From Selaginella moellendorffii (lineage: Eukaryota; Plantae; Lycopodiophyta), in assembly GCF_000143415.4 (NCBI RefSeq), contig NW_003314316.1:598182-662181 (forward strand): DNA of 64,000 nucleotides. Reading direction: 5' to 3'. A program made the translations under genes and the position numbers. The number at the start of each line of letters is the position of its first letter. Positions within the stretch are counted from its first letter, which is position 1. Shown piece after piece: positions 9,960-32,555 of this stretch. Under the pieces are notes generated by a model. That model did not search any database. It had not been told where the DNA came from and saw only the letters and a program-made list of their open reading frames with translations.

Positions 9960-12900
9960 TGTCGCGCATGTGACTTCGGGTATCGAAAGTTACCTGTCGA
10001 CCAGTCCTTACGGACACTCTTACCTTACTGCCACGATGGCAAGAGGTCGGTATTGCTGGTTCCTTTTATCAGCCCCTCTTGTTCAAGTGTTAGTAAACTG
10101 GACTTTGCATCTGTACTTGGCCGGATGAACACAAGGACGGAATTCCTAAGTGTCTATTCAGCCAAGCATACTTGGCCTGGCTTTTTAGTTCTCTTTTGCT
10201 CTGTCTTGCACTGGCTTGACAAGAACCCTCGCGTATTGAGATTGGTCCCTCAATATCGCTACATGATAGCTTACCGTGTCTGCCAAACACCCTCGCTATC
10301 ATGCCCTTTGTGTTAGTCTCATTTCGGTCCCAAATGCTATTTATGGAAAGTGTCTAGATTTGCTTATTTGGTATATCTACGGAATGTAGAGATTGTCCTG
10401 AACACAATGGTGTTCGTCCTGTGTCCAAATTCGCAATCTAAGGACATTCCATATTTAGTAAGTTTCGAGCTTGTCCCAGAGACTAACTCCTGATACTAAG
10501 GGAGGCTTGGGGTGAAAGCCCAAAGCGTGTGTTCCTCAAGGGGGGGGGGGGGCTGTGGGGGGTTCCAAATGTATAGTAGGGATAGTGGGTAGGTCGGGCA
10601 TGGCCGACCAACCTGAGGCATAGTCTAGCTCCCGCTTGCGTGCCTGTCCTTGTTCTGCGTCCGGCTTGGGTCTAAGCCCAAGTTCCATTCCATGCTAGTT
10701 GGTGGAGTACCCATGTCTTCGCGTTAGGCCACCGGTATGCCGAAATAGCGTCAGACTCCGTTTGGCTCCATTTTGCGTGCTGGTCCTGGCATTGGGATAC
10801 TGGTTACTCTAGGACTGTTCCAAGTCGCTCCGGGCTCCTGTCCCTTCGCTCTTTGGGCTTCATGCTCGGGAGTTGTTCCGTGGTTCGGTTCCGTCACTCC
10901 TTGGCTTCGTGCTTGGGAGTTTGGCACTGTTCCTTCGTTCAGTGGCCCAAGGCCCTGAACCTCAGGTTCCTATGGACACGTGGCATGGACACGTGGCATG
11001 TGACATGTGGCATCTGTCACGTGGCACAAAGAGGGTTTAAGTTCCGCTTCGTGGTGTTATCCTATGGTAAATCATCATAGGATAAAGGGTCAAAACCACG
11101 TGCGCTACATTTGGTATCAGAGCATGAGTCTCAGCGAGTACTATACAATGAGATTGGGCAACTAGTCTCGTTGCATACGCAGAGATGAAAACGATGATCC
11201 GAGTGGGTACACGTTTTGGTGCAAAGGCTTCGCAATTGTTCCTTGGGTATGGATTTGGTTACCTTGTTGTACCTTATGATGTGAGCTTGCTCTTGGGCTC
11301 ACAAGAGGGATTGAGTTGTTCCATTCGCACGAGTTTGAGCTTGGACTCATGAGTGAGGCACATTAGCAACTTGAGATTACACTTTGAGTTGGCAAGATTA
11401 ATGTTAGCCTATCGGTGGTTCCATGAGTTGTTCCATGTACCGTGAGTGAAAGCAAACCTTCCCTGGGTTTGCTATGAGTGGCAAATAGGCTGGTCCGTAG
11501 CTGTTTAGCACGGCACTAGTGGATCCTTCCTAGGCATAGTTACAAGTGGATCAGTCAAGACTGTAGGGATTAGTCTATTGGTTCAAGTAATCATTGCCGT
11601 GCTCTCTCATAAACTTTTCTTGGATTGGACTGAAGGCAGTGTGAAAGCAAGCTTGAGGTGTAGTCAAAAGATAAGACTGAAAAGAGAGTAGTCAGGGACG
11701 GAGGATCAAACACGTAAATCATCTTCTCTTTTGGAGAGATGGTTTGCAACGAGGGGTGACTCATTGCTCATGTTCACATCATGCAATCAAGAGTCCCTAC
11801 TTTGATGCATCTTGGAGATGATGGTCTTACAAATGGTGAGTTATGGGATGGATAGCAGTGAAGCGCTATACCATTTTGTCTAGGCTTGCTATTGGAAGAC
11901 TTGAGTTACAATGCTCAATTCTTTTTCCGGGAACCTTGCTATTATTCCTTGAGTAACTTGGTTGGATTAGTTTTGAGTTTGGTCGGAAAAAGAGTGGCAT
12001 GTGCTTATCCATGTTGTGAACAAAAGTTAGTGGTGTCGGGTGTTGTTAATCTCTATTAGTGGAGTGTGGCATTTATGTTGCATTCTGTCAAGTTGAGTTG
12101 GCACTTGATATTCATGTAAACCTTTGAAGTAATGACATTGGCATTGTTCGTGGTGTTGCTCAATTGATGATCAAGTCATTGTGATACTTATATCATATCC
12201 ATGTGATAATGAGCAATGTGTTTACGAAGTTGCTTAGTTAAGCGATGATCAACCCCAAAGTGGTTGATGGAGAAGCTAGTCTACTTGCAAGTAGTAGCAT
12301 TGTAGTAGTTTTGACAGGATTCTCGATAGTGGTCCATTATGCTAAGCTTAAGTTGGTACGTTGTTCCTTTAAGAGTTGGCCCATAAGGTGTTGGAAAAGA
12401 GTTGTAGCATTTGCTATAACTCATTAGTTGATCCGTTAACACTTGGAGTAGATTGTTGGATAGAGAAGGTGTGAGGTTGAGGCATTGACATTACTAGCAC
12501 TTGTGTTAGTGGAAGTGGCATTGTTATTTTAAGTGATGAGGAAGTTTCCTTAGAGCTTAATTTTCCATGTCATTTTTTCTTGTTAGTGTTTTAGCTTCAC
12601 ATTAGATCTTGAAGGTGGTTGAAGAAGAGTGTTAGTGCAATGTGGATATCCGAAGATGTGGTCTTCGTGATCAAGCCTTGGATGTTCCATTTGCATTTTA
12701 TGGATGTCGGTGTTGGATGTTGAAAATATGGGCAAATAAAGATGTTCAAGGCTTAAGCATATTATGGGTCATGAGAATTTATGTTGAGGTGAACCTATGT
12801 GAAGTTGTTGGTAGGAGGAAGTTGGTTGAATCTTGAAAGTTTGCATTCCTAGACTAAGAGTCATTCTTTCTCTAGGATGGAAAATTTTCCACAAATTTTC

Positions 12901-15900: not shown

Positions 15901-17235
15901 GGCCGGAAGGTGTCTGAGCTAGTAGCGCATCCGCGTTAGACAAAGAGGTTGCCCCCTAACTCATTTAAGTTGGTGCATTTCTCACATAGTGTGAATACCG
16001 TGAACTTTTTCTGGAGTTGTTTCCTTGGCAGTATTCTAGACTCGAGTATGCATCGACGAGGACGTCGATTTTCCCTAGGGGGGGAGAGTGTCGTGCATAT
16101 GACTTCGGGTATCGAAAGTTACCTGTCGACTAGTCCTTACGGACACTCTTACCTTACTGCCACGATGGCAGGAGGTCGGTATTGCTGGTTCCTTTTATCA
16201 GCCCCTTTTGTTCAAGTGTTAGTAAATTGGACTTTGCATTTGTACTTGGCCGGATAAGCACAAGGACGGAATTCCTAAGTGTCTATTCAGCCAAACATAC
16301 TTGGCCTGGCTTTTTAGTTCTCTTTTGCTCTGTCTTGCACTAGCTTGACAAGAACCCTCGCGTATTGAGATTGGTCCCTCAATATCGCTACATGATAGCT
16401 TACCGTGTCTGCCAAACACCCTTGCTATCATGCCCTTTGTGTTAGTCTCATTTCGGTCCCAAATGCTATTTATGGAAAGTGTCTAGATTTGCTTATTTGG
16501 TATATCTACGGAATGTAGAGATTGTCCTGAACACAATGGTGTTCGTCCCGTGTCCAAATTCGCAATCTAAGGACATTCCATATTTAGTAAGTTTCGAGCT
16601 TGTCCCAGAGACTAACTCCTGATACTAAGGGAGGCTTGGGGTGAAAGCCCAAAGCGTGTGTTCCTCAAGGGGGGGGGGCTATGGGGGGTTCCAAATGTAT
16701 AGTAGGGATAGTGGGTAGGTCGGGCATGGCCGACCAACCTGAGGCATAGTCTAGCTCCCGCTTGCGTGCCTGTCCTTGTTCTACGTCCGGCTTGGGTCTA
16801 AGCCCAAGTTCCTTTCCATGCTAGTTGGTGGAGTACCCATGTCCTCGCGTTAGGCCACCGGTATGCCGAAATAGCGTCAGACTCCGTTTGGCTCCGTTTT
16901 GCGTGCTGGTCCTGGCATTGGGATACTGGTTACTCTAGGACTATTCCAAGTCGCTCCGGGCTCCTGTCCCTTCGCTCCTTGGGCTTCATGCTCGGGAGTT
17001 GCTCCGTGGTTCGGTTCCGTCACTCCTTGGCTTTGTGCTTGGGAGTTTGGCACTGTTCCTTCGTTCAGTGGCCCAAGGCCCTGAACCTCAGGTTCCTATG
17101 GACACGTGGCATGGACACGTGGCATGTGACACGTGGCATCTGTCACGTGGCACAAAGAGGGTTTAGGTTCCGCTTCGTGGTGTTATCCTATGGTAAATCA
17201 TCATAGGATAAAGGGTCAAAACCACGTGCGCTACA
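9960..17235 (+). mobile_element. Non-autonomous (LARD-like) family-C LTR retroelement; LTRs 9960-11109 and 16089-17235
   Basis: Near-identical TG..CA LTRs; PBS TGGTATCAGAGC at ~11112; PPT GGGGGGAGAG before 16089; perfect TSD GCATC (9955-9959, 17236-17240); 5-kb interior has no coding ORF. Confidence 0.92.
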
Positions 17236-17240
17236 GCATC

Positions 17241-18801
17241 AAACCCCTTGCTTGGGGGAGTCCCGTGATGAAGTCCATTGTAAGACATTTCCACGGACGA
17301 TCTGGAATTGGGATGCTTTGCAACAAGGCCCCACTAGCCTTAGTCACGGCTTTGACCTGCTGACATGTTGGACATGTCTTTACATAGTCTTGGACGTCCT
17401 TAGCCATATCTGGCCAATGGTACTTCCTCTTGAGTAAGCCTATCATCTTGGGCACTCCGCCGTGTCCCGCAAGAGGTCCATCATAATACTCTTCTAAGGC
17501 TACCTTCCTTAGTTCCCCTTCTGGAACATACACCCTCGTTTGCTTGTAATAGATGAGTCCGTTGCGTTCCGCATAATCCGTTTTCTCTTCCGTTGGCAAC
17601 TCACCTCTCTGGTGAGCTTCCTATGCCTCTAGATTCCTCAGCAACACTTCTTGTGCTAGACCATTGTTCTCATATGCTGTTCGCACATCGTCCCAGAAGG
17701 TTGCTGTTGCGCTGGATATTGCCAACCTCAAGCTCGCTTTTCGACTTAGCGCATCCGCCACGATGTTGCTCTTCCCAGGCTTGTACAGAATCTCGCAATC
17801 AAACTCGGCCAAGGCATTGGCCCACCGACACTGTTTCCCTCTCAGGTCGGGTTGTGACAAAAAGTGTTTCGTTGCCACATTGTCCGTGTAAACCTTGAAG
17901 TGTCTCCCAAGGTAGTGTTGCCACTCCTTGAGCGCCTTAACCACCGCAAACAATTCCTTCTCATGGGCAGGCCACTTCCGTTGAGCCTTGTCCAACTTCT
18001 TTGAGAAGAACGCTATTGGATGGTTGTCTTGCTTCAAAACTGTGCCCAACGCAAAGTCTGGAGCATCCGTTTCTACCTCAAAGTCTTTACCAAAGTCTAG
18101 TAATGCCAACACGGGAGCCTTCCTCAACTTCCCTTTGAGGTGGACGAATGCCGCTTCGCATTCCGCTGTCCATACCATCTTCCCTTTTTCTGTTTGGTCC
18201 GTTAAGGGCAAGGCTACTCTCAAATAGTGTCTGATAAACTTTCGGTAGTAGATGCATAGCCCCAAGAACACCCTCAACTCATGTATATTCGATGGTCGCT
18301 CCCATTCCTGGATCACTTGGACCTTCTCCGGGTCCACCTTGAGCCCGTCCTGGCCCACCACATGCCCGAGAAACTTTACCTCTTGTTGAGCAAAGTCACA
18401 TTTGCTCTCTTTAGCATACAGTTTGTGTTCCCTTAGTTTCTCAAACACCTTCGCCAAGTGTTCGGCATGCTCCTCTAGTGTCTCGCTATAGATCAGGATG
18501 TTGTCAATATAGACGACCACGAAGTGATCTAGATAGGGTACAAAAATGTGGTTCATCAGCGCCGAAAACGTTGCTGGCGCATTGCATAGCCCGAAGGGCA
18601 TCATCAAAAACTCAAAGCTCCCATACCTCGTTCGACAGGTTGTCTTCTCGACATCTTCCTCGGCTACCCTGATCTGGTAGTATCCTGACCTTAGGTGAAT
18701 CCTCGAGAAGTATTTTGCCTTTCCCAACCTATCGAACAGGTCCTCAATTCTTGGCAAAGGGTACTTGTTCTTCTTTATATACTTGTTAAGCAACCGGTAG
18801 T
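17241..18801 (-). pseudogene. RT / RNaseH / integrase N-terminal (zinc-binding) part of the family-B pol
   Basis: ORF 17621-18793 ([40 protein letters not shown]) and ORF 17231-17599 (GH..CPTC). Confidence 0.92.
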
Positions 18802-18825
18802 ATGCTCTATTTCGTTAAAGTGGGA
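18802..18825 (+). repeat. Left TIR of the DNA transposon
   Basis: Reverse complement of 32528-32551 with one mismatch. Confidence 0.92.
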
Positions 18826-19461
18826 TTTATTCAGTAAAATGGGACTAGGTACAAATTTTCAAGTATTTGAAAATGACGTGAAATTATATGTTTTTTGTCC
18901 AGGGGCTAGACATATCTGGGGCATGGTGACTAGCGCGGTGACTTTATGTCCAGACTGAGTCCATTTGGTTGTATAATAAATCTCATTGTCAAGGTGAACA
19001 AGCCGAATCTGAAGCTAAAGAAGAGCGATGGCATGCGCGCACACACTATTTGTTTGTTCATTGAGCATGTGGTGAGCTTTCCAAGATGAACGTCATTCCT
19101 ATTAGCCAAACATATAACTTAATGGTGAGAACATTTAGATATTATTCAATGTTATCTTTTTCTAACGAATCTAATTATGAAGGTGTAGCAAGAGGCATTG
19201 CTAGTCTGGAGAAGTCATTTAACTCATTTGACCCTTAGTGTATTTTCATGAAACTAAATAACATTCATATTATTAAGGAATTTCTCTAGTACCTTTTTTT
19301 TATGACATAGAGGCTTGCATTTCTTTCAAAGGTGATTTAGTAAAAGGCCTGAGGGCACATGCCATTCTATTTCTCAGACCGGTATTAAGATATACTAGTG
19401 CAAAGGGAAAAAGGTATTTGGTGATCAAGTAAATGGCATGAGGGCACACGCCATTATAAGC

Positions 19462-19719
19462 CTAAGCGCTAGTGGACACCTCCTTTTTGGTACTCTCAAC
19501 GGTACTATCATCCTTCTCCGGGTCAGTTGTTTTGTTTTGGATTGTTGTCTCTGACGTTACTGGGGTGTTCTCGATAGTTGTTAATGTTGCCGTTTGTTCA
19601 GAAAAATGATCACCTGGAGTATAGTACGGGGAGTTTGGAAGACTTATATATTCTACATCTTCACCTATCTCCTTCTCCGTCTCCTTTTCTGCCTCATTTA
19701 CAGATTTTGTGCTTGCCAT
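19462..19719 (-). CDS. Possible small orphan ORF or exon (85 aa, Thr/Glu/Lys-rich) inside the transposon
   Basis: MASTKSVNEAEKETEKE... open in an AT-rich region, with palindromes on both sides; no recognisable domain. Confidence 0.25.
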   Translation of the reverse strand: MASTKSVNEAEKETEKEIGEDVEYISLPNSPYYTPGDHFSEQTATLTTIENTPVTSETTIQNKTTDPEKDDSTVESTKKEVSTSA

Positions 19720-20357
19720 GAGAACGCTCTTCACCCTAAAATATGGAGTTCGTTGTGTTATAAAAGGAAACCAACTCACACGCTGCAAGGGAATGATGGT
19801 ACATAAAGCACGTAAGCCCACAATATGGGTTTATGTGCCATTAATATGGGCCACACGCCATATTATTAGATTTATGCACGTGTGATTGGTAAATGCATAT
19901 GTCACATCATCTTTGTTTTACCTCACACACTATATCAGGCCTAATGAACCATATCACATGTGCGCACATGCTATATATATGGAGAAGTATTATGCAAGGA
20001 TAGAAATTCAATGCATGATTGTGGAGAGCAATGGCATGAAGCCACATGCTAAATAACATTTTGGAGAAAGAATTAAAATAAAAACATGCAAACAGTACTA
20101 AGTGGACCAAGACTTAGAAGTGCACAATTGAATGAGGTATTTCTAATAAATACTTCACTCACCTCATATAGGAATGGCTACCACTCTCAAATGGCGTATC
20201 GCCTCATGCCATCACCTCGCAATTTGTTATAACAATCCGATGAATTCATATTCGGCTTGTTCACCTTGAAATTTAAGTAAGATTTGCTAGAACAACTAAG
20301 AATTTATACTTGTTATTTATATCATCTCACCTAGGAATGGCGTAAGGCCACATGCCA

Positions 20358-23300
20358 TCACGCCTCCTCTGATTCAGATTCGGATTGTTCACCTTGAAAT
20401 AAAATACATTAGAAACTTAGTAAAGGAATATTCATGAATCTCACCTTGAACCCGGGTTATGAATGCTCTTGCTGCATCTCTTGCATGGTCTGGCAATGTG
20501 ATGGTGGCACTCTGCTTTCGCATCCAACCATGCACAACATTATCCACCGATATGCTCATGCTGGGATCCCTTGGATTCAGCACCCATCTCTTTTCTAGGC
20601 AATCGTTCGTATATCCGGAACTTGGCTTGAACCACTCCACAGTTACATTGAAGGAGTTAGTTTCCGTGTCCTCCTCTGCATCAGTGATGCACCGCCCCAC
20701 CCATATCATTTGTTTTTTATTACTGGGTCTGACAAGCACGACCATTCCTTTGCAGACCTGTACTGGATTGAATGCTGAATCCGGCTTCTTGTTCCTCGGC
20801 CCACAATAGTGATCCTCAACATCGTTATCTGTCACTGCATTTCCAAAGGACATTGTTCCGCTACTATCTGGTGCTCTGGGTTCTGGCCAAAAGGACTCTT
20901 CTAATTCTTCATATACAACCGGCCCATTTTGGATAGCAGATATAATCTTCTCCCAGTATTCGAGCAAAGGTTTGCACCTCTGAAAATAGGATTCTCCACC
21001 AAACACCAACCCCCTCTTCCAGAAGGCAATATGCTGTCTAATCCCGGCCACTATACTTTCCTGGTCTTTGAGTCCATCCGGGTGCATCGGCTGTGGGGAA
21101 CCCTGAGGAATCATAGGTTCCCCAGTTATGGGATCTCTCTTGAAGAGTTCAATGCCGTCCACTGGTAGCGACACTGTGTCCCATTCTCTCATCTTGTACC
21201 TCATCACTGGAGCACCGTCACACATGCTGAAATGAAACTGAAGAGGCTTGGAGTGGCCAATCAGCGTTTCGGATCCGTCCCTGATGTAGCCTCTTACAAA
21301 CCCCTTAAAGTCTGGAACCTCTGTCAGAAGTGCAGCTTCAATAGTGCCTTTGATGCAATTTTGGAATTCATCGTAGAGTTGTGGGAGGGTGAGGACATTG
21401 GATCACCGGAGGGACTCTGCCAGGTGACTGAACATGGCATTGACGTCTTCATGAGTGTGCCCAACCATGAGAAAGCCAAGTGTAACCGTTTCAAATATGC
21501 CTTTGGCAACAAGCATCGCCAAGTACGTGAAGACGTACATGTTTTTGTTCTCACTGCCAGCATTGTCTGTTTGGAGCAGAAGATGGGGTGGAAGGCCACA
21601 TCGGCCGCAAGAACTTCCTTGAGATTCTGCTTCGTTTGGATGAGGCTGTGCATTCACCGGGCGACCAGCCTCATCGGAATGGCATGAGGCCTCACGTGAT
21701 AACCCTACAATCTGATGGCCAACATATTCACTGGGATGGCATGGGGCCCCACGCGATACTGCAAGCCTTTGCTCCTCCTCCAGCTGAACCCTGTATGGGG
21801 TTCGATCGACAAGGGCCTTATGCAAGGGTTGGCCGTTCAGCTCAGTCTGCGCACTTTGCAGAGACCTTAAGTGTTTTGCTAGGGACGCAATCATCATGTT
21901 TGCACCCCCGCCACCCCATAGAGGTACAAAGAAGTTCCCATAGTTCTGGGCACCATGCCCATGAGCGATTATGCCAAACAGAGACACAGGCAGCTGCATG
22001 GATGAAGAGATTGCCTTGGGGGCAGGATTGAGTCGAGGTAAGCACATCTTTTTCTGGTCCATTTTGTCGTGGATGATGCAGAGGTAAGAGTCAGGTCTCT
22101 CCATGGAGAGAATCCTGTTATGATAATATGCAGTCCTGCAGCTTCTCTGCTCGATGTTGTGGTCGAGCCGCCTTCTAACCAACGTCTCTCGCTCTTGAGC
22201 GCTGCAAGAATTCTTCGACAAAGCCATTTTGATAGCAGTGCACTCGTCACACTTTGAAAAGCTGGAGTACTTTCCTATACTCACATTCCTGAACCTGTTG
22301 CTCCACAATCTACTAAATCTAGATTGGCTCAGCTTCCTGTAGCCATTACTCTGGAGTTCCCGATTCACATCTTCCAATATGGCCCCCTTGGTATACATGG
22401 AAGGGAGAACTCGTTGGGTGTCTCGTGTTCCATCTTCCAAGAGGCGGGTTTTATGTGGTTGCTGCTCGCTACATGTCTCGACAAACCTCTTGAAGATTGC
22501 CTCTCCATATACAACATGACCCCTGGTTTTGTGCGTACCGTCGTTCCCACGGACTGCCTGTTGAACCCTTTATTCCTCAAACTCAGTTTTGATTCTGTAG
22601 AATGTGGTTCGAGGGACTCCATAAATGATTCTCCATGCCTTCATGCAGACCAAACCCCTCTGGAAGACCATGCCCCCCACCTGATGTTCTGAAGCATCAA
22701 CAGATGACCGTAATGCCTCATACACAAAATTGCGAGCTGCCTTCCAGGACAATGTCTTGTATCTTGCTCTCTCCTCTTCAATAGCATCCCAATTAGCATG
22801 TTGATAGCACCTCCTCTTGCAACAAGCAACTGTCGAGACCATTCGAACCTCTATCGCCATTTTTTGCCTTTTCGGTTCGTTGCTCAGATCCCTTTGGCTG
22901 CGCTTTAGGAAGGTGTACTTTCTTTTCCCATGAAGAGATGTTCTGTCATCAGTTGTAGTGGTGTTTGATTGTGAATCCTTCACATTCTCAAACACTAAGT
23001 GCCTCAATTTCCACCGCACAATGCTTCCAATAGTCAGACTGTTTTCTTCTGTGTCAACAACCTCTAAAATCGCAACTCCAATATCATCCCAGCCCAATTC
23101 TTGATTAGCAACCGCATCTCTTGGATCGACAACTGTGGCTAAGCCCTCAGCTACCACCTCCCCCTCGGGGTTGTTTAGAAACACCTTTACCTGAATCCAT
23201 GTAGCACGGTTCTTAAGATCCACGGAGGGAACATGCGTCGCACTTGCGCTGTCCCCAACATCTGCTTTCTTCTGAAGATTTTTCAAGGCAACAACAACAT

Positions 23301-23499
23301 TTACCCCGACGACCATCTCTCCTCGTTCAATAGCGACCACATTCCCATCGAAGACAGTCTCTACTGATACAGCAGCATTGCCTTCCCCAAGCCTTTGACA
23401 GTGTATAACAAAGTTCCGATCCATAGACACAAGGGTCCCTTTTGCAACTCTCTTCCCACCATTCAAAATGTAAATCTTTTCCCCAACCTTGAAGGCCAT
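20358..23499 (-). pseudogene. Sola1-like DDD/E transposase, ~1029 aa, two in-frame premature stops (22570, 21403), last intron 20393-20444
   Basis: ORFs 22570-23499, 21403-22440 and 20389-21225 share one frame; motifs FSKCDEC, HDKMDQ, LQTDNAGSENKN, FLMVGHTHEDVN; the spliced end reads VQG|EQSESESEEA*. Confidence 0.82.
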
Positions 23500-23687
23500 T
23501 CTGAAAGTGCAGAAAAGAAGTTAAGACTATACAAAAAATGATTGGAGAATGGCCTAAATCATAACATACCAAACAACCTCAATAGCATGAGGCCACATGC
23601 CATTATTCAAACATGCTATTGACACCCACGTGAAATTTCGCATTCACAAAATTGGCATGAGCCCTCATGCCATTAATGGTACCACTA

Positions 23688-23879
23688 ATGGCATGAGGCC
23701 TCACGCTATCTTTGGCCCCTGCTAGCCTGTTGTTATATTCCTTTTGCCTTGCTGCAACTGTATATATTTTTGTGTGCGTGACTAGTCACCCATACAAAAA
23801 TATATACAGTTGCAGCAAGGCAAAAGGAATATGGCAATAGGCTAGGAGGGGCCAAAGATGGCATGAGGCCTCATGCCAT
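23688..23879 (+). repeat. 192-bp near-perfect inverted repeat (hairpin)
   Basis: Symmetric about GTGACT|AGTCAC at 23783/23784; each arm ends in a 22-bp palindrome. Confidence 0.9.
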
Positions 23880-25035
23880 CTTGATATACACACAGCTGCA
23901 GGCAAGTAAAAACATACATGACAATACGCTAGCCATGAAATTGCAAGGGCCCAAGATGGCATGTGGCCTCATGCCATTTCTAAATGTGGTCCTAAGCCAT
24001 TCCATGGTGAACATACCAGGAAGCACAAGTGCCGAATATCAAGAGGAAGCGGTAGCCACACCAAAGACAGTGTCGCTCACAACACCGCAACTACTCGTAG
24101 CGCCGCTCGCAACACCGCAACTGCTCGTAGCGCCGCTCGCACAAACTGCCACTCGCATAAACTGCCGCTCGCAATGGCGCTCACAATGCCGCAACCGCTC
24201 GTAGACACATAAACCACAGCCCACAACGCCGCTTACACAAGCAGCGCTCACTGCGCTCAGCGGAACCAAGAACACGGCACAAAAAAATGATAGACCTAGG
24301 AATGAGTTCGAGAATTCAAAAATAACACACGCTTGAACGTCACATCAAATCCTCTGACAAACCAGATCTTATGATTCCTCTGACAAATTTCAAACTGAGT
24401 AGCTTCTAGACTTTGCTGTCGGAGGTTGAACTTTGTCACATCATGTCCTTGCCTCGATCCAGCTGTGCCATGTCAGTGATTCGAACTTTGCCATGCCATG
24501 TCAGCGATCCGCACCAAGATTATTCGCCGTGTAAAGGAATAATTATGCTGTGTGTGTACGTCCATTTATGGCAATATAAGACCACACGCCATTCAAAGAA
24601 TAATGCTCGACATAAGGCCACACACCATTCAAAGAATAATGCTAGTCGAGCATTTTTTGGTGCATTTTTGGGTTCAAAATTGCATGAGCCCACACGCTAT
24701 AAAGTTTACCTGTACCAAAAATAGAAACAGCTTTATTTACTTGGGAATTTAAGTGGTTGAGGCATTTTTAAACTTACAAACACATGCCCTACTTACATTC
24801 CTTTGGTTGCTTAAAATTCAAAAATATTATAAACCTTTCTTTTTGCATTTTCAATGTTTTCAATTATGGTTTTTGATTTTCGTAGGACCAGCCTAGTAAT
24901 CTATTTGCATCCCGTCATGTTTATAGCTAGCTTTCGTTTGTCCCCTTCGTTAGCCTGAGATACATCTGCTCGGCATCTGCCTCTTACAGCATTTGCCCAG
25001 AAAGGGCATCTTTCTTCACGCAGCATTTGCCACAT

Positions 25036-25069
25036 GTTTAGGGTTTAGGGTTTAGGGTTTAGGGTTTAG
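25036..25069 (+). repeat. Interstitial plant telomeric repeat (TTTAGGG)4 plus a partial unit (telobox array)
   Basis: GTTTAGGGTTTAGGGTTTAGGGTTTAGGGTTTAG. Confidence 0.9.
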
Positions 25070-26665
25070 CAATTCAGTAGCTTGATAAACATGCAAATAC
25101 AGAACTTGATGCAAAATCCTTTGATATGTCACAATGCCCCTAGGATCATAAACACATTTCAATAGAGAGGGTCTTTTCATTTCATAACTCCTTACGTAGA
25201 TCTTGGTGAAACTAGAGTTAGTGAAGTTAGTTTCTTGTGATCCCGCATCTGATTGTGATGTCCCTTTGCAATTTCGATGGAAAGGTCAATGCACACCAAA
25301 CTGTAAAATTTTGGAGCAAAATAACGGTCGGATCTATGGCAAATGCCCCTGAAACATTGTAAGGCTTGTGTGGTCTCATGTGGTGTCCGATCGAGATGTT
25401 TCTTTGCAGGGTCATCAAGAAAGACATTGTATACCATTCTGTAAAATCTAGTTGCGATCTAACGGTTGGATCTCCAGAAAACTCAAAAAAATCTCGCGCG
25501 TGTCAGAATATCCTAGGAATATACTCCTATGTGCCCCTGAAAATGGCATGCGGCCCCACACCATTCAAGAGATAACGTCAGATGACGCCGAGAATTTTTT
25601 GGTGCATTCTTTGGGTTCAAAATTGCATGAGCCCACACGCTATAAAGTTTATCTTTGCCAAATAGAGAAAAGTTTATCTGTGTCATGTGAGGTAGTTACA
25701 GTCCTTTGTGCTCGGCATCTGCCTCTTGCAGCATTTGCACTGAAAGGGAATTTTTCTCCATTCAGCATTTGGCCCTGAAAATGGCATGCGCCCACACGCC
25801 ATTCAAGGAATAACGCCACAGGACGCCTGGATTTTTAGGTTTAAAATGTTTAGGGTTTTTTGGGTTTTTTCAAAATATTTTGGGTCCAACGTTTTCGGGT
25901 TTCTTTGGTTCAAAATTGCATGAGCCCACACGCTATAATATTGATTTGAGAGAAAAATAGAAACAGATAGAATTTCTTTATTTAGCTGAACATCTGCCAT
26001 TTTTGGAAATACAAGATGCTTTGGAATATCCAATCATGCATGGTATAAATATAGCGAGGGTATTAAATGATATCCCAATCATGATCTTTCTTTTGGATTT
26101 CGCGTGCATGCAGTCCGAGGAATGATGACGTTGCGGATTTCTTTTGGATTTTGCGTGCTTGCATGCGCGCGGCAATCCAGAAATTAATGGTGGCGCCCAA
26201 GTCCGAGGAATGATGACGTGGCGGGATTACCAACCGTTGTGACATTTCGCGCGTGTGAGGTTAGGTTTTGCATTTTGCTTTGTACTCGCGCTCGCACACT
26301 CGCGCTCGCGCTCGCATCACACTCGCGCTCCCGCTCACATCGCGCTCCCACTCGCGATCACGCTCACTTCTCTACAGGTTTCTCGTGTGCATCGGCGTCC
26401 ACTCGCGCTTGCATCACACTCGCGCTCGCATCGCGCTCGTGTGCATCGGTGTCCACTTCAAGACACACCCAGTTTGTAACTTCGCCGCCAACTCCGCCGC
26501 CCACTCCGCCACCCACACGCAGCCCACTTGGTGTCCCGGGAGATTTCAGCACCACTCTCCAACTATAAGTGGCAGAGTAGCCTTGCTGCTACGATCCGCT
26601 GCACACACAGTGCACATTCACCAGCGAGTCCGGCCTCGATTGTCACGGCCTCCATTCGGCTTCAA

Positions 26666-29600
26666 ATGGTAAGTCTTTTAGGCCAAGTAGAAAATGGCAT
26701 GAGGCCACATGCCATTCAGTAGCAACATTGGCATGCACCGATTGGGCTCTCGAGTGCAGTTCGGTTACAGATGGCGTGTAGCCTCACGCCATCTTAGGAT
26801 GCAGCCTCAAGACATCTGATGCAGTGGTGAATGGCGTGTGGCCTCACGTTATTTCCAGCTACTAGCTTTTCATCTGTCAGCTCTAATTGTTGTGCATTTC
26901 TGAACAGGCGAGGAATTGCGTTCTTCTTCCAGCCACTGTCAATGTGGATGCAGAGAAGGGGGAGGAGCTCACCAGTTGGACTTTCGGGATGGAAAGCCCT
27001 GGAGGGGGGCAGCGGCTATGAGGAATTCCTAGAGGGAGCTAGGGAGAGGTTGTCCAGGAGGCCCACAATTTCAAAGATGCTGCGGGTCTATGAAGATCAC
27101 ATGGAATCCACGGACCTCACTTACGGCGATGTTCAAAAACTATATTCCAACATTGAGCCGTTGAGAGTGCCTCCAGTTCGCGAAGCGAAGGGGAAGGGGG
27201 TCGATCTGGAAACTACCCCGAAGCAGAAAAGGGTGGTCAAGCTCAAGCCGACGTCCGACTCTGCTGCTCCAAAAAAGAAGCTACTCGGTGATGCCATTGC
27301 CTCGGGTTCGAACACTACACCCACCAAAAAGAAGAGCCGCAAAGAGCAGAAAGAGCAAGAAGAGGCAGCAAAAATCGTCGCAGATAATAGTACTTGTTAC
27401 TATTCCAACAAAGTATATACAATCGACGTGAGCCGTATCGAGATCCAAAGTAAATACAACCACAGGCTAGTATCTGATGAGTGGGTGGAGAAACTGAAGC
27501 AGAAGATGCTGGCAAGTCCAGTAACACCCGACATCGCAGACGTGATCCCCTACTACCGAAAAATGAAGGGCGAGACGAGGTTTCCAGACTTGATCAATAG
27601 GAAGGTGTTGGACGATCAGAACATCCGGTTCTATGCCATCTCCGGGCAGCATTCTAGCTTGGCGATGCAACAGATAGTTGTGGATATTATGGTGGGCGAG
27701 GAGGTGAAGAAAGTCTTCAAGACAAGAGTTGTCCGCCTGATAAAAGGCAACTCGCCCCTCCGATCTATCATATACATCTCCCACGCGCAGAATGTCAAGC
27801 AAGAAACGTGCTACAAATCGGGTCTGCACGAGACATTGGCACGAACACGGAAGCTCTGGGTTCAACTGAAGAAGCCACAAAAACCAGGACAAGGACGTGC
27901 ACTAGCAACTAGCGCCTGGCAGGTAAGCCTCGTTGCATGTGGCATAGCATGTGGCCTCACGCCATTTCCATTGCAGGAATTCTCGAGTCTTCTCTCGAAA
28001 ACACTGGGGGTCAATGACACACTCAGCATCCATAACATTCTACTCGCGACAAAAGTTGTTTTTGACAAATGGGTAGATGTGCTGAGGAGGTACCATGACG
28101 GGGAGTTGCTAAACTCAATGGGTGTGGAGGACGGCCGGAAGCCCAATGATTTGAAGCTCAACGCCTTACGTTTCTCGCGGTCTCTAGACGATGATGACCT
28201 TCTGACAGTGGCTAATGCTCTTCTACGTGGTGAGGTAGTCTTCAACAAGACCAAAATGACTCCCGGCCATATTGTGACATACGAGGACTTGTGCACGACT
28301 CTGAGAGCTCGTGCGCTATTGAAGGATTGGATCTTCGAGCAAGTGGCCGTGGCGAGGGTGAGCATCGACACCACGCAAGAGATGATGGAAGAGTTGGACT
28401 TGTCAAATGAAGACATCGACGACTACGTGAAGGGGGCCCCCAAGTTCATCGATCTGCTGCGGGATGCCACGAAAAGTAAAGCTGAGAAGTTGGATCAGTA
28501 TCCAAATTTCATTAAGAGGGATGTCGACCGCCGGCTTCAGAAACAGCTCGACCCCACAGGAGAGGCCTATCGAGAACCTTACCGGGTATACGTGAATTCG
28601 GATGAGGATCAAAGGTGGAGGAGCATCGTTTCCCGCGGAGATGAGCAGGTCAAGAACATCTTTTGTGTGATGGACTTCACAAACAAGGAGATCACTCATG
28701 CAGATGAAGTCAGCTCCATCATTGACTTAATGGTGGGACTTGTGGAGGTGGAATCTTTAGTCCACTATATGATCTACAACTCCGAATCCTATCACAAGTT
28801 CTGGAAGGCCTTGAACGAGGTGAAGGCTCGGTTGAAAGGCAAGGAGATGCGGGAGATCCATGGGATAATGGCTAAGAAGAAGATACCGACGAATGTCCGC
28901 ATCTTCACACTCGCCCTTGTTATTGGTCCTGCAGCAGAGTGGGACTGGAGTGACTTCCCAGCTTCGTTCAACAAAGCCGATCGAATTGATCTGAGGGAGG
29001 TCAATTTACCCGTGCCTAAGGAACTAAAGACGGCTATGGAGCTTTCGAATCCAAAGAAAGCTCCAGGTGCAGCATGGGAAATGCTCAGCTGGGTCTTCAA
29101 CGCAATAGCAGGTGACTCCAAGGGCAAATGCATTGTCGAGTACAACTGCGGCGGACTATTCTTTCGAGCCGCACTACTCAAGGGTGTCTCGTGTGTTGCG
29201 GTGACAAACTCCATTGAAGAGGTGACTTCAATGGAGCATATAATTACAGTTGCCAAAGAAAAACAGTATCTTCTCTACGAATCTGGTGAGTACGCACTTT
29301 AAGTTTAAATGTTATCTCACAAGCTCTGTATGCAGGAGCGTGGCCACCCCCAGATGCTGAAACGGCGTTAACAGCTACTGATGTTAGGCCGAGCTCACAA
29401 CCTGCACAAGGTAAGGTCACGTGAGGCCTCACGCCATTTTGATTATAGATCGTTGTGAATATTCAGACACGAGGACTGAAAAGCGCACTGGTGGCGCGTC
29501 GAAGAAGGACAAACAGACAAGCAATAGGAAAAAAGGAGGTACAAATTATATTTGCAATGGCGTGTGGTCTCATGCCATTCCTTGCAGGAGACACTTCTTC

Positions 29601-32109
29601 AAAGGCAAAACAGGCAAGCACCAGCCAAGCTCAAACTGACAGTGGTCATAAAAAGCGAAAGCACGTTGGACAGTCGTCGGGATCAGAGGCGTTTGATTTG
29701 AAAAGGAAGAAGGGCAACGAAAAGATGATAGGTAATGCCTCGCGGTTATGGCGTGTGTGCTCATGCCATTCATTGCAGATCAAGGGCTGAGTGAAAGGAG
29801 CCAGTCACCACCTTCTGACTCAGATTCCTATGGCGGACTCCCCTTCCCCAATCTCAATGGAGAGGTACAATGGATGAGGGATGCTTTTCAAGTCAGGGCC
29901 ACGTTTTTCTCATCTCGTCGTCTTCGAAGGGTGCAAGAACGTGCAAAAACCATGTTAAGATAGTCGGGTGAGGATACGGTCCTAGGTCACGCACTAAAAC
30001 AGGCTATGGATGTCTTGTATTTTGAGATGGAGACTCGGCCAGATGATTTTCCCAAGATGGTCCTGGAAAAACAAGCCATCCAGCCTGAGCAGCCTATGGA
30101 AGAAATGCAGGAGGGGGATGAGGACCCAGAGAAAGATAATGAGCAAGAAGAGCAGAAGGACGAAGAGGAGGACAAAGAAGAGGAGGACGAAGAAGAGGAG
30201 GATGAAGAAGAGGAGGACGAAGAGGACTTGGATGGTCCTCACAATGGTGACGATCACAATAACGACGATGACGATGATGACGACGATGGCCAGCCTGAGG
30301 TGGCCAAAGAGCAGCGGAGGAAGGTCATACAAGACAAACCATCAGGTAAATAATAGTACATCCATTCCTAACCTTTTACCATTTCTAACATTGTCCATGT
30401 AGGTCGCAGAAGAAATGGTAAGTAGAGATTATTCAGTTGAATTAAGATACAAACTCTAGCCTTTAGTGTCGAGGAAGGATAGTGCCAAGCAAGGGTCGAA
30501 ACGTATGTCCAATCCTTCAGAATCAGCAGTGCGCCCAAGTGATATCGGTCCTAGTTCCTCAATAGCAGTTGATGGTAAATACAGTATAGTCGATTCAATG
30601 TGCTAATGAGTTTGTTTTTAGTAGCACGGGAGGATACCATCTCAATCGAAGGGAGATATTTGGACATGCATATGGATCCGCCAGTGGACTCTACTTGCCT
30701 GCAAGAGTCATCAGAGCTGGTGGAGGCTACTATCCATATCAACACCAAGCAAGCTGACCACGCTCCACTTGATGCTGCCCATACCATTGAGTCAATCTTG
30801 TTCACGTATCCAACTGACGGTGACCAGGCGCCATTGGACCCGCATGAGGCCGCCCCAGCCGCCGAGCCGGTCGTATCCTCATTTCCAACGGACTCAACGT
30901 GTGCCCAATCGTCTGACTACGCGCCGTTGGAACCTCCCTACACCGCCCCTACTGCCTGTTCGGTCATGTCCACTTTGCCAACGGAGGCACCAGCTGAAAT
31001 GGCGTGTGATCACACGCCATCGGAACCACCCCATGCCACTGTTGAGCCAGTTGTACCAGAGTCTACAGCTGAAATGGCATGTGCCCACACGCCATCGGAT
31101 GCGATTGACCCCACATTGCAGAGGAGAGTATTTCCGCCCTTCACGTTTCCTCGACCAAAACCCTCTGAACGACCATCGGGAGCACCATTCGCTAATATTG
31201 TAGATGGTAAAATTGACTTGTACCATTTTTTATGCTGACACATTTCATTTCAGAGTCACGGCGAAAGTACTGTATCGTTTTTTATCTGAACGGTGTCCTT
31301 TTCTCCCATGAGCGTGGCTCGTCCTCGAATGTCACTGCACCCTCCAAAGCCTGCGGTCGCAAGTTGGTCAAAAGAGACAGATTCACATTAATCACACAGG
31401 AGAAACTGCGGGATCTAATAATGACCATGCGACACTTAAAACAGAGGGCCGGGTTCAATTTGCAATTGGGAGTTTGGACATCCATGATGCGCCACAATGC
31501 ATTAACGTTGCTACAGATGATGCACGATCAGACGCGAGTAATATTACCATTTGACTTTCTCCTAACGCAGGAGGATTGCTTGACTATGGTCCATGTGAGG
31601 GGTAGCAAGCCCATCTTCGTCAAGGCAGAGGCTGTAGTGATGAACCGGACTGCTAGGTCAAGTGAAATCCTCATCATCGATGACTCGCCGATTAAAACTG
31701 CAGCGAACACACACACATATGCAGTGCACCCCATCTCTTGCAGTATGGAAACTAGGGAGAAGAAACCGTATGTTCTTATGCAAAACGGCTTGAAGCGATG
31801 GTGATAGAGAACCGGCCAGTCCAGGAGGTGGCTGCAGAAATCAACCAAATGGCAGATGGAACGGTATATCAGAAGCCATTTGATCGGACAGACACCAGTC
31901 ATCATTTATGGCATGTATATTGTCTAGCCAAGCACTATCCGCATCTCCATAATCTGCTCAACCGGATGGGTTCTTCGACCACTGAACATGAGCGTGGACG
32001 TATTAGAGAAGAGATGGCATTACTATTGGGTTTAAATCCTGATAGTGTGGAGAGTGATGAAATTCCAAGATTATTGTATAGGCGTTGGAGGCAAAAAATA
32101 ACAGTCTGA
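26666..32109 (+). pseudogene. Multi-exon transposon cargo gene (~1600 aa): ParB/Srx-like domain, degenerate amino-MTase-like fold, low-complexity/acidic linker, FCP1/NIF-like HAD domain; lightly disabled
   Basis: 823-aa ORF joined in frame to downstream ORFs by GT-AG introns 27923-27976, 29286-29335, 29411-29466, 29539-29587, 29732-29778, 30346-30402, 30418-30466, 30575-30621, 31207-31253. There is one stop (29961) and a frameshift near 31795. The 5' end (ATG 26666, intron 26669-26907) needs a frameshift near 27005 and is uncertain. Domain calls are by eye. Confidence 0.65.
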
Positions 32110-32527
32110 GATGGCATGTATTTATTTAAAAATGTAACTTATTATGGCATGGGGTTCCATGCCATTGTATTAATATTAAAAGACAATTCTTTGAGAGGAT
32201 TTGCATTATACTAGAAGTGTTACAGCATGTTATTGGAAGTCTACGAAGTTGTTTTATTAATAAGGGGAAAGTAAAGATTGAATGGGGACTTGGGCTCCAC
32301 CTAGACTCGGAACAACTGAGCCAATATTAAAAGGATGGAAAGAAATTGGATGACAATGACAAGGAGAAGAGAGAGGTGAAGCAGTGGCAGGGGGAGGAGA
32401 AGTGATTAAGTAGACATTTCCTTGTTTAAAATAAAATGGCATGTGCCTCAATGCAGTTGAATTTTGTTATATTTATATACTATATAAAGATTTGGAAACC
32501 TTATTTTACAAGTGGGATAATGACAAT

Positions 32528-32551
32528 TCCCACTTTAACGAAATAGAGCTT
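32528..32551 (-). repeat. Right TIR of the DNA transposon
   Basis: TCCCACTTTAACGAAATAGAGCTT followed by TSD TAGT. Confidence 0.92.
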
Positions 32552-32555
32552 TAGT

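What the first reader, a model, noticed from the sequence alone, without database searches (positions are those of the whole stretch)
18802..32551. Giant Sola1-like transposon with a ParB-like cargo gene and its own dispersed palindromic sites: candidate transposon-encoded self-recognition system
Seen: a cleanly delimited 13.75-kb element (24-bp TIRs, TAGT TSD, splits host RT at CID/YR). It holds two divergent genes, a transposase and a ~1600-aa multi-exon protein, plus ~30 copies of one 22-bp palindrome that I saw nowhere else in the 64 kb. Established: Sola elements make 4-bp TSDs and are usually described with only a transposase; bacterial ParB loads at palindromic parS sites; Arabidopsis VANDAL transposons encode VANC proteins that bind motifs dispersed in the element's non-coding DNA and counter silencing. 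Inference: the cargo protein, or the transposase's extra domains, binds the palindromes to coat, unsilence or synapse this long element. That would be a parS-like or VANC-like system in a different superfamily.
Basis: partly seen in the sequence, partly recalled or inferred. Interest (0 to 1): 0.92.

Follow-up and report, generated by a model that had tools for sequence, protein, structure and literature searches.

The report
Sola1 transposon with ParB-like partner gene
This is a real but decayed 13.75-kb plant "jumping gene" of the Sola1 kind that carries a second large gene with a bacterial ParB-like fold and 31 copies of its own 22-base palindrome; related elements keep the layout but use different palindromes, which suggests self-recognition, an idea already proposed for algal transposons in 2025.

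Summary
The element runs 18802-32551, with 25-nt TIRs and a TAGT duplication. Removing it restores the host gypsy RT motif MCIDYR. All 31 copies of ATGGCRTGNGGCCNCAYGCCAT lie inside it; shuffles expect 0.

The minus-strand gene is a DUF7869 transposase. The plus-strand gene has a ParB/Srx-fold domain, shown by AlphaFold plus two fold searches. A helical domain follows, then a beta-class N6/N4 methyltransferase-like domain without the DPPY motif, then an FCP1/NIF-like phosphatase domain.

Four related loci carry their own, different 21-24-bp palindromes: 44, 26, 4 and 4 copies. One is a 16.8-kb Riccia element with the same two-gene layout. One conserved intron of the accessory gene holds the family's own palindrome in three families.

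This supports an element-encoded protein that recognises the element's own DNA. No binding, expression or splicing was shown, and I cannot say which protein binds.

The gene content is not new. A brown-alga Sola1 with a divergent ParB+methyltransferase gene and a red-alga ParB-like gene beside inverted-repeat arrays were published in 2025. This scan also noted sister copies elsewhere in this genome, with the same conclusion. This is a new land-plant variant of a known kind.

The parts
18798..18801 (.). left copy of the 4-bp target site duplication TAGT
   Evidence: excision restores the host RT frame
18802..18828 (+). left terminal inverted repeat (A-T-GCTCTATTTCGTTAAAGTGGGATTT)
   Evidence: I11: 25 nt, 96% complementary. 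The core resembles the Sola1 TIR in PMC3845634 Table 1.
19028..32457 (.). array of 31 copies of the 22-bp palindrome ATGGCRTGNGGCCNCAYGCCAT. Starts: 19028, 19344, 19433, 19953, 20031, 20191, 20337, 21679, 21736, 23582, 23652, 23688, 23858, 23956, 24607, 24679, 25543, 25622, 25781, 25915, 26694, 26771, 26831, 27944, 29416, 29557, 29748, 30999, 31074, 32144, 32436
   Evidence: No site lies outside the element. C5, T7 and A16 are invariant in 31/31 sites; positions 9 and 14 are free.
20389..23499 (-). transposase gene in three ORF blocks: 22570-23499 (N-terminal, Cys-rich), 21403-22440 (core with the IIHDKMDQKK and LLLQTDN..ENKN motifs), 20389-21225 (C-terminal). GHTHEDV lies at the end of the middle block.
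   Evidence: Pfam DUF7869 E 1.1e-28. Homologs are 38-41% identical. 34-37% identical to the Riccia element's transposase.
23500..26668 (.). region between the two divergent genes, with 11 palindromes and a 192-bp dyad (arms 23688-23783 / 23784-23879)
   Evidence: (I1)
26669..26858 (+). three candidate GT..AG mini-introns (26669-26719, 26764-26797, 26827-26858), each built around one palindrome; the 5' end of the accessory gene is uncertain
   Evidence: Other copies carry 170 extra nt at 26994/27001. No RNA support.
27383..27922 (+). ParB/Srx-fold domain of the accessory protein (motif FYAISGQHS)
   Evidence: AF2 pLDDT 80.6. The Foldseek top 50 are all ParB/Noc/KorB/Srx. VIA-align: PadC Z 9.8, KorB 9.2, pNOB8 ParB-N 9.0. 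Atlas finds ParB_N clusters.
27923..27976 (+). 54-nt phase-0 mini-intron candidate (CAG|GTAAGC...TTGCAG|G) holding the palindrome at 27944. The intron position is conserved in Riccia and in L005.
   Evidence: The Riccia intron 11681-11876 lies between tblastn blocks of the annotated protein P0014.
27977..28546 (+). helical middle domain, function unknown
   Evidence: AF2 pLDDT mostly 70-92. Homologous to Selaginella P0001, P0026 and P0029. No PDB or Pfam match.
28547..29285 (+). beta-class N6/N4 DNA methyltransferase-like domain. The D of DPPY is kept (CVMDFTNK) but PPY is lost; motif I is shortened (EYNCGG).
   Evidence: The family profile hits M.RsrI at E 0.006 over the HPTQKP..FxGSG region. 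The Riccia homolog hits Pfam N6_N4_Mtase at E 0.0011. VIA-align: M.MboIIA Z 7.2 and other beta-class enzymes. Atlas by shape and by features. The model confidence here is low.
29286..29778 (+). four phase-1 mini-introns (29286-29335, 29411-29448, 29539-29587, 29732-29778; 50, 38, 49 and 47 nt). The last three each hold one palindrome. The exons between them encode a basic Lys/Ser-rich linker.
   Evidence: frames join without stops across canonical GT..AG sites. Inference only; no RNA support.
30130..30234 (+). acidic Glu/Asp-rich coding repeat
   Evidence: (D8, D10). It attracts unrelated contigs in read laying.
31232..32109 (+). FCP1/NIF-like phosphatase domain, broken in this copy (ORFs 31232-31804 and 31798-32109). 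Its motif reads YLN here and DLN in other copies.
   Evidence: Pfam NIF E 0.001 here and 7e-11 in Riccia. 31283 T>G and a 7-nt indel at 31776-31778 in other copies. Translation.
32525..32551 (-). right terminal inverted repeat
   Evidence: I11
32552..32555 (.). right copy of the TAGT duplication

Best explanation
This is a decayed copy of a large cut-and-paste DNA transposon of the Sola1 superfamily that inserted into the RT gene of a Ty3/gypsy element.

Besides its DDE-type transposase (Pfam DUF7869) it encodes, divergently, an accessory protein. That protein has a ParB/Srx-fold domain, a helical domain, a catalytically degenerate beta-class N6/N4 methyltransferase-like domain, charged linkers and an FCP1/NIF-type phosphatase domain.

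The 31 dyad-symmetric 22-bp sites are most likely binding sites for a dimer of an element-encoded protein. I favour the accessory protein, through its helical and methyltransferase-like parts rather than the ParB-like domain alone. Such binding would let the element mark its own copies and no others.

The sites sit where they cost least: between the genes, near the ends, in mini-introns and in unconstrained linkers.

Shown: the anatomy, the folds, the motif's confinement to the element, and its turnover between families with length, symmetry and even intron position retained.

Inferred: that a protein binds the sites, which protein it is, and the consequence (countering silencing or controlling transcription of the element as VANC does, or helping the ends of a long element to meet).
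For: - Precise insertion and TSD.
- All 31 sites lie inside the element, with 0 expected by chance.
- Conservation is by position, not by pairing: many sites keep only 7-9 of 11 complementary pairs, there are no compensatory changes, and the flanks carry about 0 bits.
- ParB/Srx fold.
- Methyltransferase-like signals from four weak, partly independent routes.
- The Riccia sorocarpa element L001 has the same layout: TIRs 317-352 / 17091-17126, a homologous transposase, and an accessory gene with NIF at 7e-11. It carries 44 copies of a different palindrome, all inside its TIRs.
- L005 has 26 copies of a third palindrome. L007 and L008 have 4 copies each of a fourth and a fifth. Shuffles expect 0-0.05 in each.
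- The same intron after the ParB-like domain holds 1, 3 and 2-3 copies of the family's own palindrome in the window, Riccia and L005.
- Literature: a divergent ParB+methyltransferase gene in Ectocarpus Sola1-1_Ec32 (PMC12477816); inverted-repeat arrays next to a ParB-like gene in Plavaka; family-specific motif arrays bound by VANC (PMC5735166).
Against: - There is no binding data of any kind.
- No RNA evidence: the two runs guessed to be RNA gave unspliced contigs only, so expression and the mini-introns are inferred.
- In true ParB the N-domain is a CTP switch and a separate HTH reads parS. Here the GxxR motif is replaced by SGQHS and no HTH was detected.
- The methyltransferase-like part is modelled with low confidence, and its Pfam score is below the curated cut-off.
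- L007 and L008 were found through the transposase, and their contigs are too short to show whether an accessory gene is present, so the palindromes could go with the transposase instead.
- Five sites lie in frame inside long ORFs (21679, 21736, 27944, 30999, 31074), so exclusion from coding sequence is not strict.
Confidence: 0.55

Rival explanations
1. The palindromes are binding sites of the transposase itself, through its poorly conserved Cys-rich N-terminal part. They would act like the subterminal and internal repeats of Ac or En/Spm to assemble the transposition complex of a long element. The accessory protein would do something else.
For: L007 and L008 were found through the transposase alone, and both have palindromes close to the transposase gene. 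Seven sites cluster between the left TIR and the 3' end of the transposase gene. The transposase N-terminal block is as divergent between families (21-28% identity) as the accessory protein.
Against: The palindrome has no likeness to the TIR. The TIR and subterminal sequences keep shared motifs between families (TTCAGTAAAATRGGA in the window and Riccia; AAAGTGG with insect Sola1), while the palindromes are completely replaced. The densest arrays lie next to or inside the accessory gene (L005 26-bp tandem array at 2194-2524; the conserved intron).
Confidence: 0.2
2. The methyltransferase-like domain is still an active N6-adenine or N4-cytosine enzyme. On this view the palindromes are its methylation targets, so the element writes a private DNA mark on itself. 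This is the reading offered for the algal proteins.
For: The architecture matches phage and plasmid ParB_N+N6_N4_Mtase fusions. The HPxxKP...GxxVhDFFxGxG region is recognisable. The Asp of motif IV is nearly invariant (D233). Beta-class enzymes of bacterial origin are active in rotifers and Marchantia (PMC8885841; 10.1101/2021.02.12.428880).
Against: The PP(Y/F) of the catalytic motif is missing in every plant member aligned: DFTN, DVTH, DATT, DSAN. Motif I is one residue short. Pfam scores are below the cut-off.
Confidence: 0.1
3. The palindromes act in RNA, as hairpins in introns and UTRs. They could tune splicing of the mini-introns, or feed or block small-RNA pathways.
For: At least four, and up to seven, sites lie in candidate introns of 32-54 nt, usually 4-11 nt upstream of the AG. 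The intron location is conserved in three families.
Against: Eleven sites lie between the divergently oriented genes and others lie near the ends. Variation does not preserve pairing: there are no compensatory pairs, and A-C and T-T oppositions are common. No transcript evidence.
Confidence: 0.08
4. The palindromes have no function for the element. They would be by-products of slippage, gene conversion or hairpin-prone replication that spread within a long element.
For: Some copies are parts of local duplications (78-nt unit x3, 70-nt x2, 41-nt x2; 26-28-bp tandem spacing in L005 and Riccia).
Against: Five families independently keep a 21-24-bp dyad of different sequence. Invariant positions persist across 31 and 44 copies. 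The same intron is occupied in three families. In the window and in Riccia all copies are confined within the TIRs.
Confidence: 0.07

Closest known systems
Sola1-1_Ec32 of the brown alga Ectocarpus (Dinatale et al. 2025, PMC12477816)
   Same: A giant Sola1 transposon (21.5 kb). Its accessory gene is transcribed opposite to the transposase and encodes a ParB-like domain plus an N4C/N6A DNA methyltransferase domain. The authors propose that it binds and modifies its own element.
   Different: Here the methyltransferase motifs are degenerate, an FCP1/NIF phosphatase domain is added, the host is a land plant, and a dispersed family-specific palindrome array is documented. The paper's text has no occurrence of 'palindrom'. 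I did not compare the sequences directly.
Plavaka PAG3 of the red alga Bostrychia moritziana (Petroll et al. 2025, 10.1101/2025.02.11.637652)
   Same: A transposon accessory protein with an N-terminal ParB-like domain. Arrays of inverted repeats lie next to the gene across families. The authors propose self-binding.
   Different: It belongs to another transposon superfamily (Plavaka/KDZ). Its partner domain is a 2OG oxygenase. The repeats are tandem and next to the gene, not spread through the whole element and its introns.
VANDAL21 VANC and its target motifs in Arabidopsis (Hosaka et al. 2017, PMC5735166)
   Same: A transposon-encoded non-transposase protein acts on short motifs that pile up in the non-coding DNA of its own family. 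Related families have different targets.
   Different: It belongs to the Mutator superfamily, and VANC has no ParB, methyltransferase or phosphatase domain. Its motifs often form tandem repeats (paper abstract) and, from my own recollection, are about 9 bp and not dyad-symmetric. For VANC, binding and loss of methylation are shown by experiment; here nothing is.
Bacterial ParB-parS, and phage/plasmid ParB_N + N6_N4 methyltransferase fusions
   Same: The N-domain has the ParB/Srx fold. The domain order ParB-like then beta-class methyltransferase is that of the phage fusions. The cis sites are dyad-symmetric and occur in several copies.
   Different: There is no GxxR CTP-binding motif, no ParB HTH and no ParA partner. 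The sites are 21-24 bp and number 30-40 per element. The gene is eukaryotic, has introns, and is fused to a phosphatase domain.
En/Spm TnpA and its 12-bp subterminal motifs
   Same: A second element-encoded protein binds repeated short motifs in the element. It is needed both for transposition and for reversing silencing.
   Different: The TnpA sites are confined to the subterminal regions. It belongs to another superfamily, and the protein is unrelated.

Membership tests
Sola1 superfamily of DNA transposons | 4-bp target site duplication | tested here: met
   TAGT on both sides; excision restores the host ORF
Sola1 superfamily of DNA transposons | target preference AWWT/AWDT (called a hallmark in PMC3845634, citing Bao et al. 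2009) | tested here: inconclusive
   TAGT fits 3 of 4 positions. One insertion cannot test a preference.
Sola1 superfamily of DNA transposons | termini like known Sola1 TIRs | tested here: met
   The window has CTATTTCGTTAAAGTGGGA; the published insect Sola1 TIR has GTTTATTTTGAAAGTGGTG. I compared them by eye; they share TATTT.G..AAAGTGG with a 2-nt indel.
Sola1 superfamily of DNA transposons | transposase homologous to Repbase Sola1 transposases | not testable with these tools
   No Repbase sequences are held and Bao et al. 2009 is not held. Proxy evidence: Pfam DUF7869 at 1e-28, and the same divergent ParB+methyltransferase partner gene as the Sola1-1_Ec32 element curated by TE specialists.
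ParB/Srx superfamily | ParB/Srx fold | tested here: met
   pLDDT 80.6. The Foldseek top 50 are all ParB/Noc/KorB/Srx/SbnI. VIA-align Z is 9.8-6.2 for eight family members, then drops to 4.2.
Canonical ParB (CTP-dependent parS clamp) | GxxR / GERRxR CTP-binding motif | tested here: not met
   The equivalent loop is the invariant (A/V)ISGQHS, which has no arginine.
Canonical ParB (CTP-dependent parS clamp) | HTH_ParB DNA-binding domain after the N-domain | tested here: inconclusive
   No Pfam or PDB sequence match for the helical middle domain.
N6_N4_Mtase (beta-class amino-methyltransferases, PF01555) | Pfam score above the gathering cut-off | tested here: not met
   The best member (Riccia) scores 19.4 bits against a cut-off of 26.7, E 0.0011. 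The window has no hit.
N6_N4_Mtase (beta-class amino-methyltransferases, PF01555) | catalytic (D/N/S)PP(Y/F) motif | tested here: not met
   D is kept (D233, nearly invariant) but is followed by FTN, VTH, ATT or SAN.
N6_N4_Mtase (beta-class amino-methyltransferases, PF01555) | HPxxKP ... FxGxG AdoMet region and overall fold | tested here: inconclusive
   The profile aligns to M.RsrI 203-270 at E 0.006. Beta-class enzymes give the longest structural alignments at Z 6-7.2, but the model has pLDDT below 60 there.
FCP1/SCP (NIF, PF03031) phosphatases | Pfam score above the cut-off, and a DxDx(T/V) motif | tested here: inconclusive
   The Riccia homolog scores 42.5 bits against a cut-off of 21.8 and has LDVDY. 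The window scores 19.2 bits and has FYLNG, which reads DLNG in other copies.
VANC-type sequence-specific self-recognition system | family-specific motif arrays in the non-coding DNA of the element, diverging between related families | tested here: met
   Five families have five different dyads. One conserved intron holds different palindromes in three families.
VANC-type sequence-specific self-recognition system | the element-encoded protein binds the motif and changes the element's chromatin or methylation state | not testable with these tools
   This needs EMSA/DAP-seq/ChIP and methylomes.

The most novel reading that the evidence does not exclude
The accessory protein is a pseudo-methyltransferase 'reader' that binds the element's private 22-bp dyads as a dimer. 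Through its FCP1-like phosphatase domain it would act on RNA polymerase II or chromatin proteins only at its own copies. That would be a self-addressed transcription or anti-silencing switch that co-evolves with its sites. The binding sites would be kept along the whole 14-kb element by being housed in mini-introns. It would be a VANC-like system, built from bacterial parts, that arose independently in seed-free plants.
Probability: 0.3. Interest if true: 0.8.

Novelty: new variant of a known kind. Interest (0 to 1): 0.55.

Why it matters
How long transposons tell their own copies from the rest of the genome and escape silencing is known in molecular detail for very few systems; VANC in Arabidopsis is one. 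ParB-like accessory genes in giant algal transposons were reported in 2025, but the cis sites were described only briefly.

The comparison here gives a concrete, testable pairing in land plants. Each family has a defined 21-24-bp dyad in tens of copies. The dyad's sequence turns over while its length, its symmetry and even the intron it occupies are kept.

That provides ready-made probes for binding assays. The five families form a natural series for mapping which protein region sets the specificity. If binding is confirmed, the proteins could serve as programmable, sequence-specific DNA-targeting modules.

The locus also shows bacterial ParB and N6/N4 methyltransferase folds, fused to a eukaryotic phosphatase, being carried by plant transposons. 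A transposon-free relative sits among ordinary genes in Selaginella moellendorffii.

Tried and rejected
- Word-indexed protein searches with the 823-aa accessory ORF, whole and residues 195-560, found nothing. Only the exhaustive HMMER search gave 17 remote relatives. One of these, P0002, is a bacterial repeat protein and is spurious.
- Pfam, PDB-sequence and profile searches gave nothing usable for the ParB-like or the middle domain. Only fold comparison identified the ParB/Srx domain.
- Foldseek on the second model gave no meaningful match. That model is poor beyond residue 195.
- RNA evidence: no run on record as RNA holds the stretch. The two runs guessed to be RNA gave unspliced contigs, so they test neither expression nor splicing.
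- I looked for G-U versus A-C bias at the mixed CpG positions of the sites, as a test for RNA hairpins. The numbers were too small and the result depends on strand, so I dropped it.
- I first read the R/Y variation as CpG decay in this copy. No difference inside a palindrome is among the 40 listed (38 more are not shown), so it may be a property of the family.
- The Riccia TSD could not be read cleanly.
- Bao et al. 2009 is not held, and no paper mentions DUF7869.
- My tools did not identify the organism.

Full report
OBSERVATION

The element is real and its limits are exact. A 25-nt inverted repeat (18804-18828 / 32525-32549, 96% complementary) is the only long terminal pair. TAGT flanks it on both sides. 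Deleting 18802-32555 joins the flanks into one open minus-strand frame that reads ...[16 protein letters not shown]..., the RT motif of a Ty3/gypsy element. The flanking ORFs are RT/RNase H and aspartic protease.

The 22-bp palindrome is also real. There are 21 matches at up to 3 mismatches against 0 in 100 shuffles. With R/Y allowed at two positions there are 31 sites, all inside the element and none in the other ~50 kb.

A position count shows invariant C5, T7 and A16, free positions 9 and 14, and flanks with almost no information. The 22-24-bp dyad is therefore the conserved unit. Other palindromes that recur in the window do so only a few times each.

THE TWO GENES

The minus-strand gene (20389-23499, three ORF blocks) matches Pfam DUF7869 at 1e-28. 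It carries the motifs IIHDKMDQKK, LLLQTDN..ENKN and GHTHEDV. These align at 38-41% identity with DUF7869 proteins from assemblies and metagenomes.

The plus-strand gene starts near 26.7-26.9 kb and runs to about 32.1 kb. Its domains are as follows.

- ParB/Srx domain. Residues encoded by 27383-27922 were folded with 13 remote homologs (pLDDT 80.6). All 50 best Foldseek matches are ParB, Noc, KorB, PadC, sulfiredoxin or SbnI. An independent all-against-all aligner puts eight ParB/Srx members on top (Z 9.8 to 6.2) before a drop to 4.2. The loop that binds CTP in true ParB (GxxR) is the invariant ISGQHS here.
- Helical middle domain. The next ~190 residues form a confident helical domain with no known relative.
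- Methyltransferase-like domain. The following ~250 residues are modelled poorly. Four weak routes still point to a beta-class N6/N4 DNA methyltransferase:
  - protein-language-model neighbours are phage ParB_N+N6_N4_Mtase fusions;
  - the Riccia homolog hits PF01555 at E 0.0011;
  - the family profile aligns to the HPTQKP...FAGSG region of M.RsrI at E 0.006;
  - beta-class enzymes give the longest structural alignments.
- Motif status. The Asp of DPPY is kept, but PP(Y/F) is absent in all plant members. Catalysis is probably lost.
- Phosphatase domain. The C-terminal part is FCP1/NIF-like: E 0.001 here and 7e-11 in Riccia.

This copy is damaged. Other copies carry 170 extra nt at 26994/27001 and 7 nt at 31776-31778. 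They also read G at 31283, which restores the phosphatase Asp.

RELATIVES

The liverwort Riccia sorocarpa has a 16.8-kb element (L001, TIRs 317-352 / 17091-17126) with the same divergent layout. Its transposase is 34-37% identical over the core, and it has a homologous accessory gene. It has no copy of the window's palindrome. Instead it has 44 copies of another one (core GGGACGCGTCCC; 0.4 expected), all between its TIRs.

A 6.9-kb contig with an accessory-gene homolog (L005) has 26 copies of a third dyad (TCNCAACGCNGCGTTGNGA). These include a 26-bp-period tandem array just upstream of the gene.

Two contigs found through the transposase carry a fourth and a fifth dyad: AGATAAAATCGCGATTTTATCT (L007, 4 copies) and GGCTCAAA-N6-TTTGAGCC (L008, 4 copies). 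Chance expectation is 0-0.05. All five dyads are 21-24 bp long.

WHERE THE SITES LIE

- Between the left end and the transposase gene: 7 sites.
- Between the two genes: 11 sites, two of them within a 192-bp dyad.
- In three candidate mini-introns at the start of the accessory gene: 3 sites.
- After the accessory gene: 2 sites.
- Within the gene bodies: 8 sites.

Of the gene-body sites, 27944 lies in a 54-nt CAG|GTAAGC...TTGCAG intron candidate. Sites 29416, 29557 and 29748 lie in three of four consecutive phase-1 mini-introns of 38-50 nt, whose removal joins the reading frames without stops. The two sites in the transposase lie in the unconserved linker between the first two catalytic motifs.

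The intron after the ParB-like domain is at the same position in three families, before EF/QF/RF. It holds one copy of the window's dyad, three of Riccia's and two or three of L005's. The Riccia intron lies between blocks of the annotated protein. Several homologs called from contigs end in W-K/Q-V, which is the read-through of this same splice site. This pattern of kept location with replaced sequence is the strongest sign here that the sites are selected and co-evolve with something the element encodes.

MECHANISM

The dyad symmetry, the ~10-bp half-sites, conservation by position rather than by pairing, confinement within the TIRs, and turnover between families all fit binding by a dimeric element-encoded protein.

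I favour the accessory protein. The palindromes change completely between families, while the window and Riccia keep a shared subterminal motif and the window's TIR core resembles an insect Sola1 TIR. The densest arrays also adjoin or lie inside the accessory gene.

The transposase remains a serious rival, because L007 and L008 do not show whether an accessory gene is present.

The ParB-like domain should not be read as the parS reader. In real ParB that job belongs to an HTH domain, which was not found here.

What binding would achieve is inference: anti-silencing as with VANC, polymerase control through the phosphatase domain, or pairing of distant ends. No binding, expression or splicing data exist.

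COMPARISON WITH WHAT IS KNOWN

The gene content is already known. Ectocarpus Sola1-1_Ec32 (21.5 kb) has a gene opposite the transposase that encodes a ParB-like domain plus an N4C/N6A methyltransferase. [quoted passage not shown]

In the red alga Bostrychia, Plavaka elements encode a ParB-like/2OG-oxygenase protein next to tandem inverted repeats, with the same suggestion.

VANDAL/VANC shows by experiment the logic of family-specific motif arrays (PMC5735166).

What this land-plant lineage adds:
- the phosphatase domain;
- the loss of methyltransferase motifs;
- the spread of tens of dyads through the whole element, including mini-introns;
- a five-family series showing dyad turnover.

Earlier notes of this scan describe sister copies elsewhere in the same genome and reached the same reading. 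I used them as leads only and tested the claims here.

VERDICT

- Observation: confirmed.
- Interpretation: partly supported.
- Class: a new variant of a known kind.
- Interest: moderate (0.55).

Noticed in passing
window 23688-23879: An almost perfect 192-bp dyad (two 96-nt arms, 92% complementary, no spacer) lies between the two divergent genes, with a palindrome site at each outer end. It may be the core of a bidirectional promoter.
   Followed up: no
L002 10190-11422 (Selaginella moellendorffii GL377575.1): A 451-aa gene (P0001) is homologous to the helical plus methyltransferase-like part only. It is a single ORF set among ordinary genes (ArfGap, VQ, SCAR). There is no transposase and no palindrome array within 10 kb. 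It may be a domesticated relative of the accessory gene.
   Followed up: partly
window 29438 joined to 32528 (run X4): One contig of another organism's DNA run joins the base just after the palindrome at 29416-29437 to the right TIR, skipping 3089 nt. It may be an internally deleted, non-autonomous copy. Only 22 nt lie on the shorter side, so the evidence is weak.
   Followed up: no
window 26600-32551 (runs X4 and X12): Runs labelled as two other organisms hold this stretch in contigs that are mostly 90-99% identical to it. Most differences listed in the summary counts are A>G and T>C (window A or T where the others have G or C), so this copy carries an excess of G>A and C>T changes.
   Followed up: partly
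L005 2194-2524: A head-to-tail array of 13 palindrome copies with a 26-bp period lies directly upstream of, and runs into, the start of the accessory-gene ORF. In Riccia, neighbouring sites are spaced 27-28 bp apart.
   Followed up: partly
window 3437, 6171, 41946, 51502, and 3719, 6453, 51783: Two other palindromes (TGCACTTGGNCCAAGTGCT and GGCCGTGTTTGCCAACACTGCC) recur three or four times, always about 280 nt apart. They look like parts of a longer repeated unit, possibly an LTR, and are unrelated to the finding.
   Followed up: no
L004 (Logan ERR5554644, 5.3 kb, 32% GC): This contig encodes a homolog of the helical plus methyltransferase-like part (P0029/P0031) and has no repeated palindrome. 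So not every relative of this module comes with an array.
   Followed up: partly
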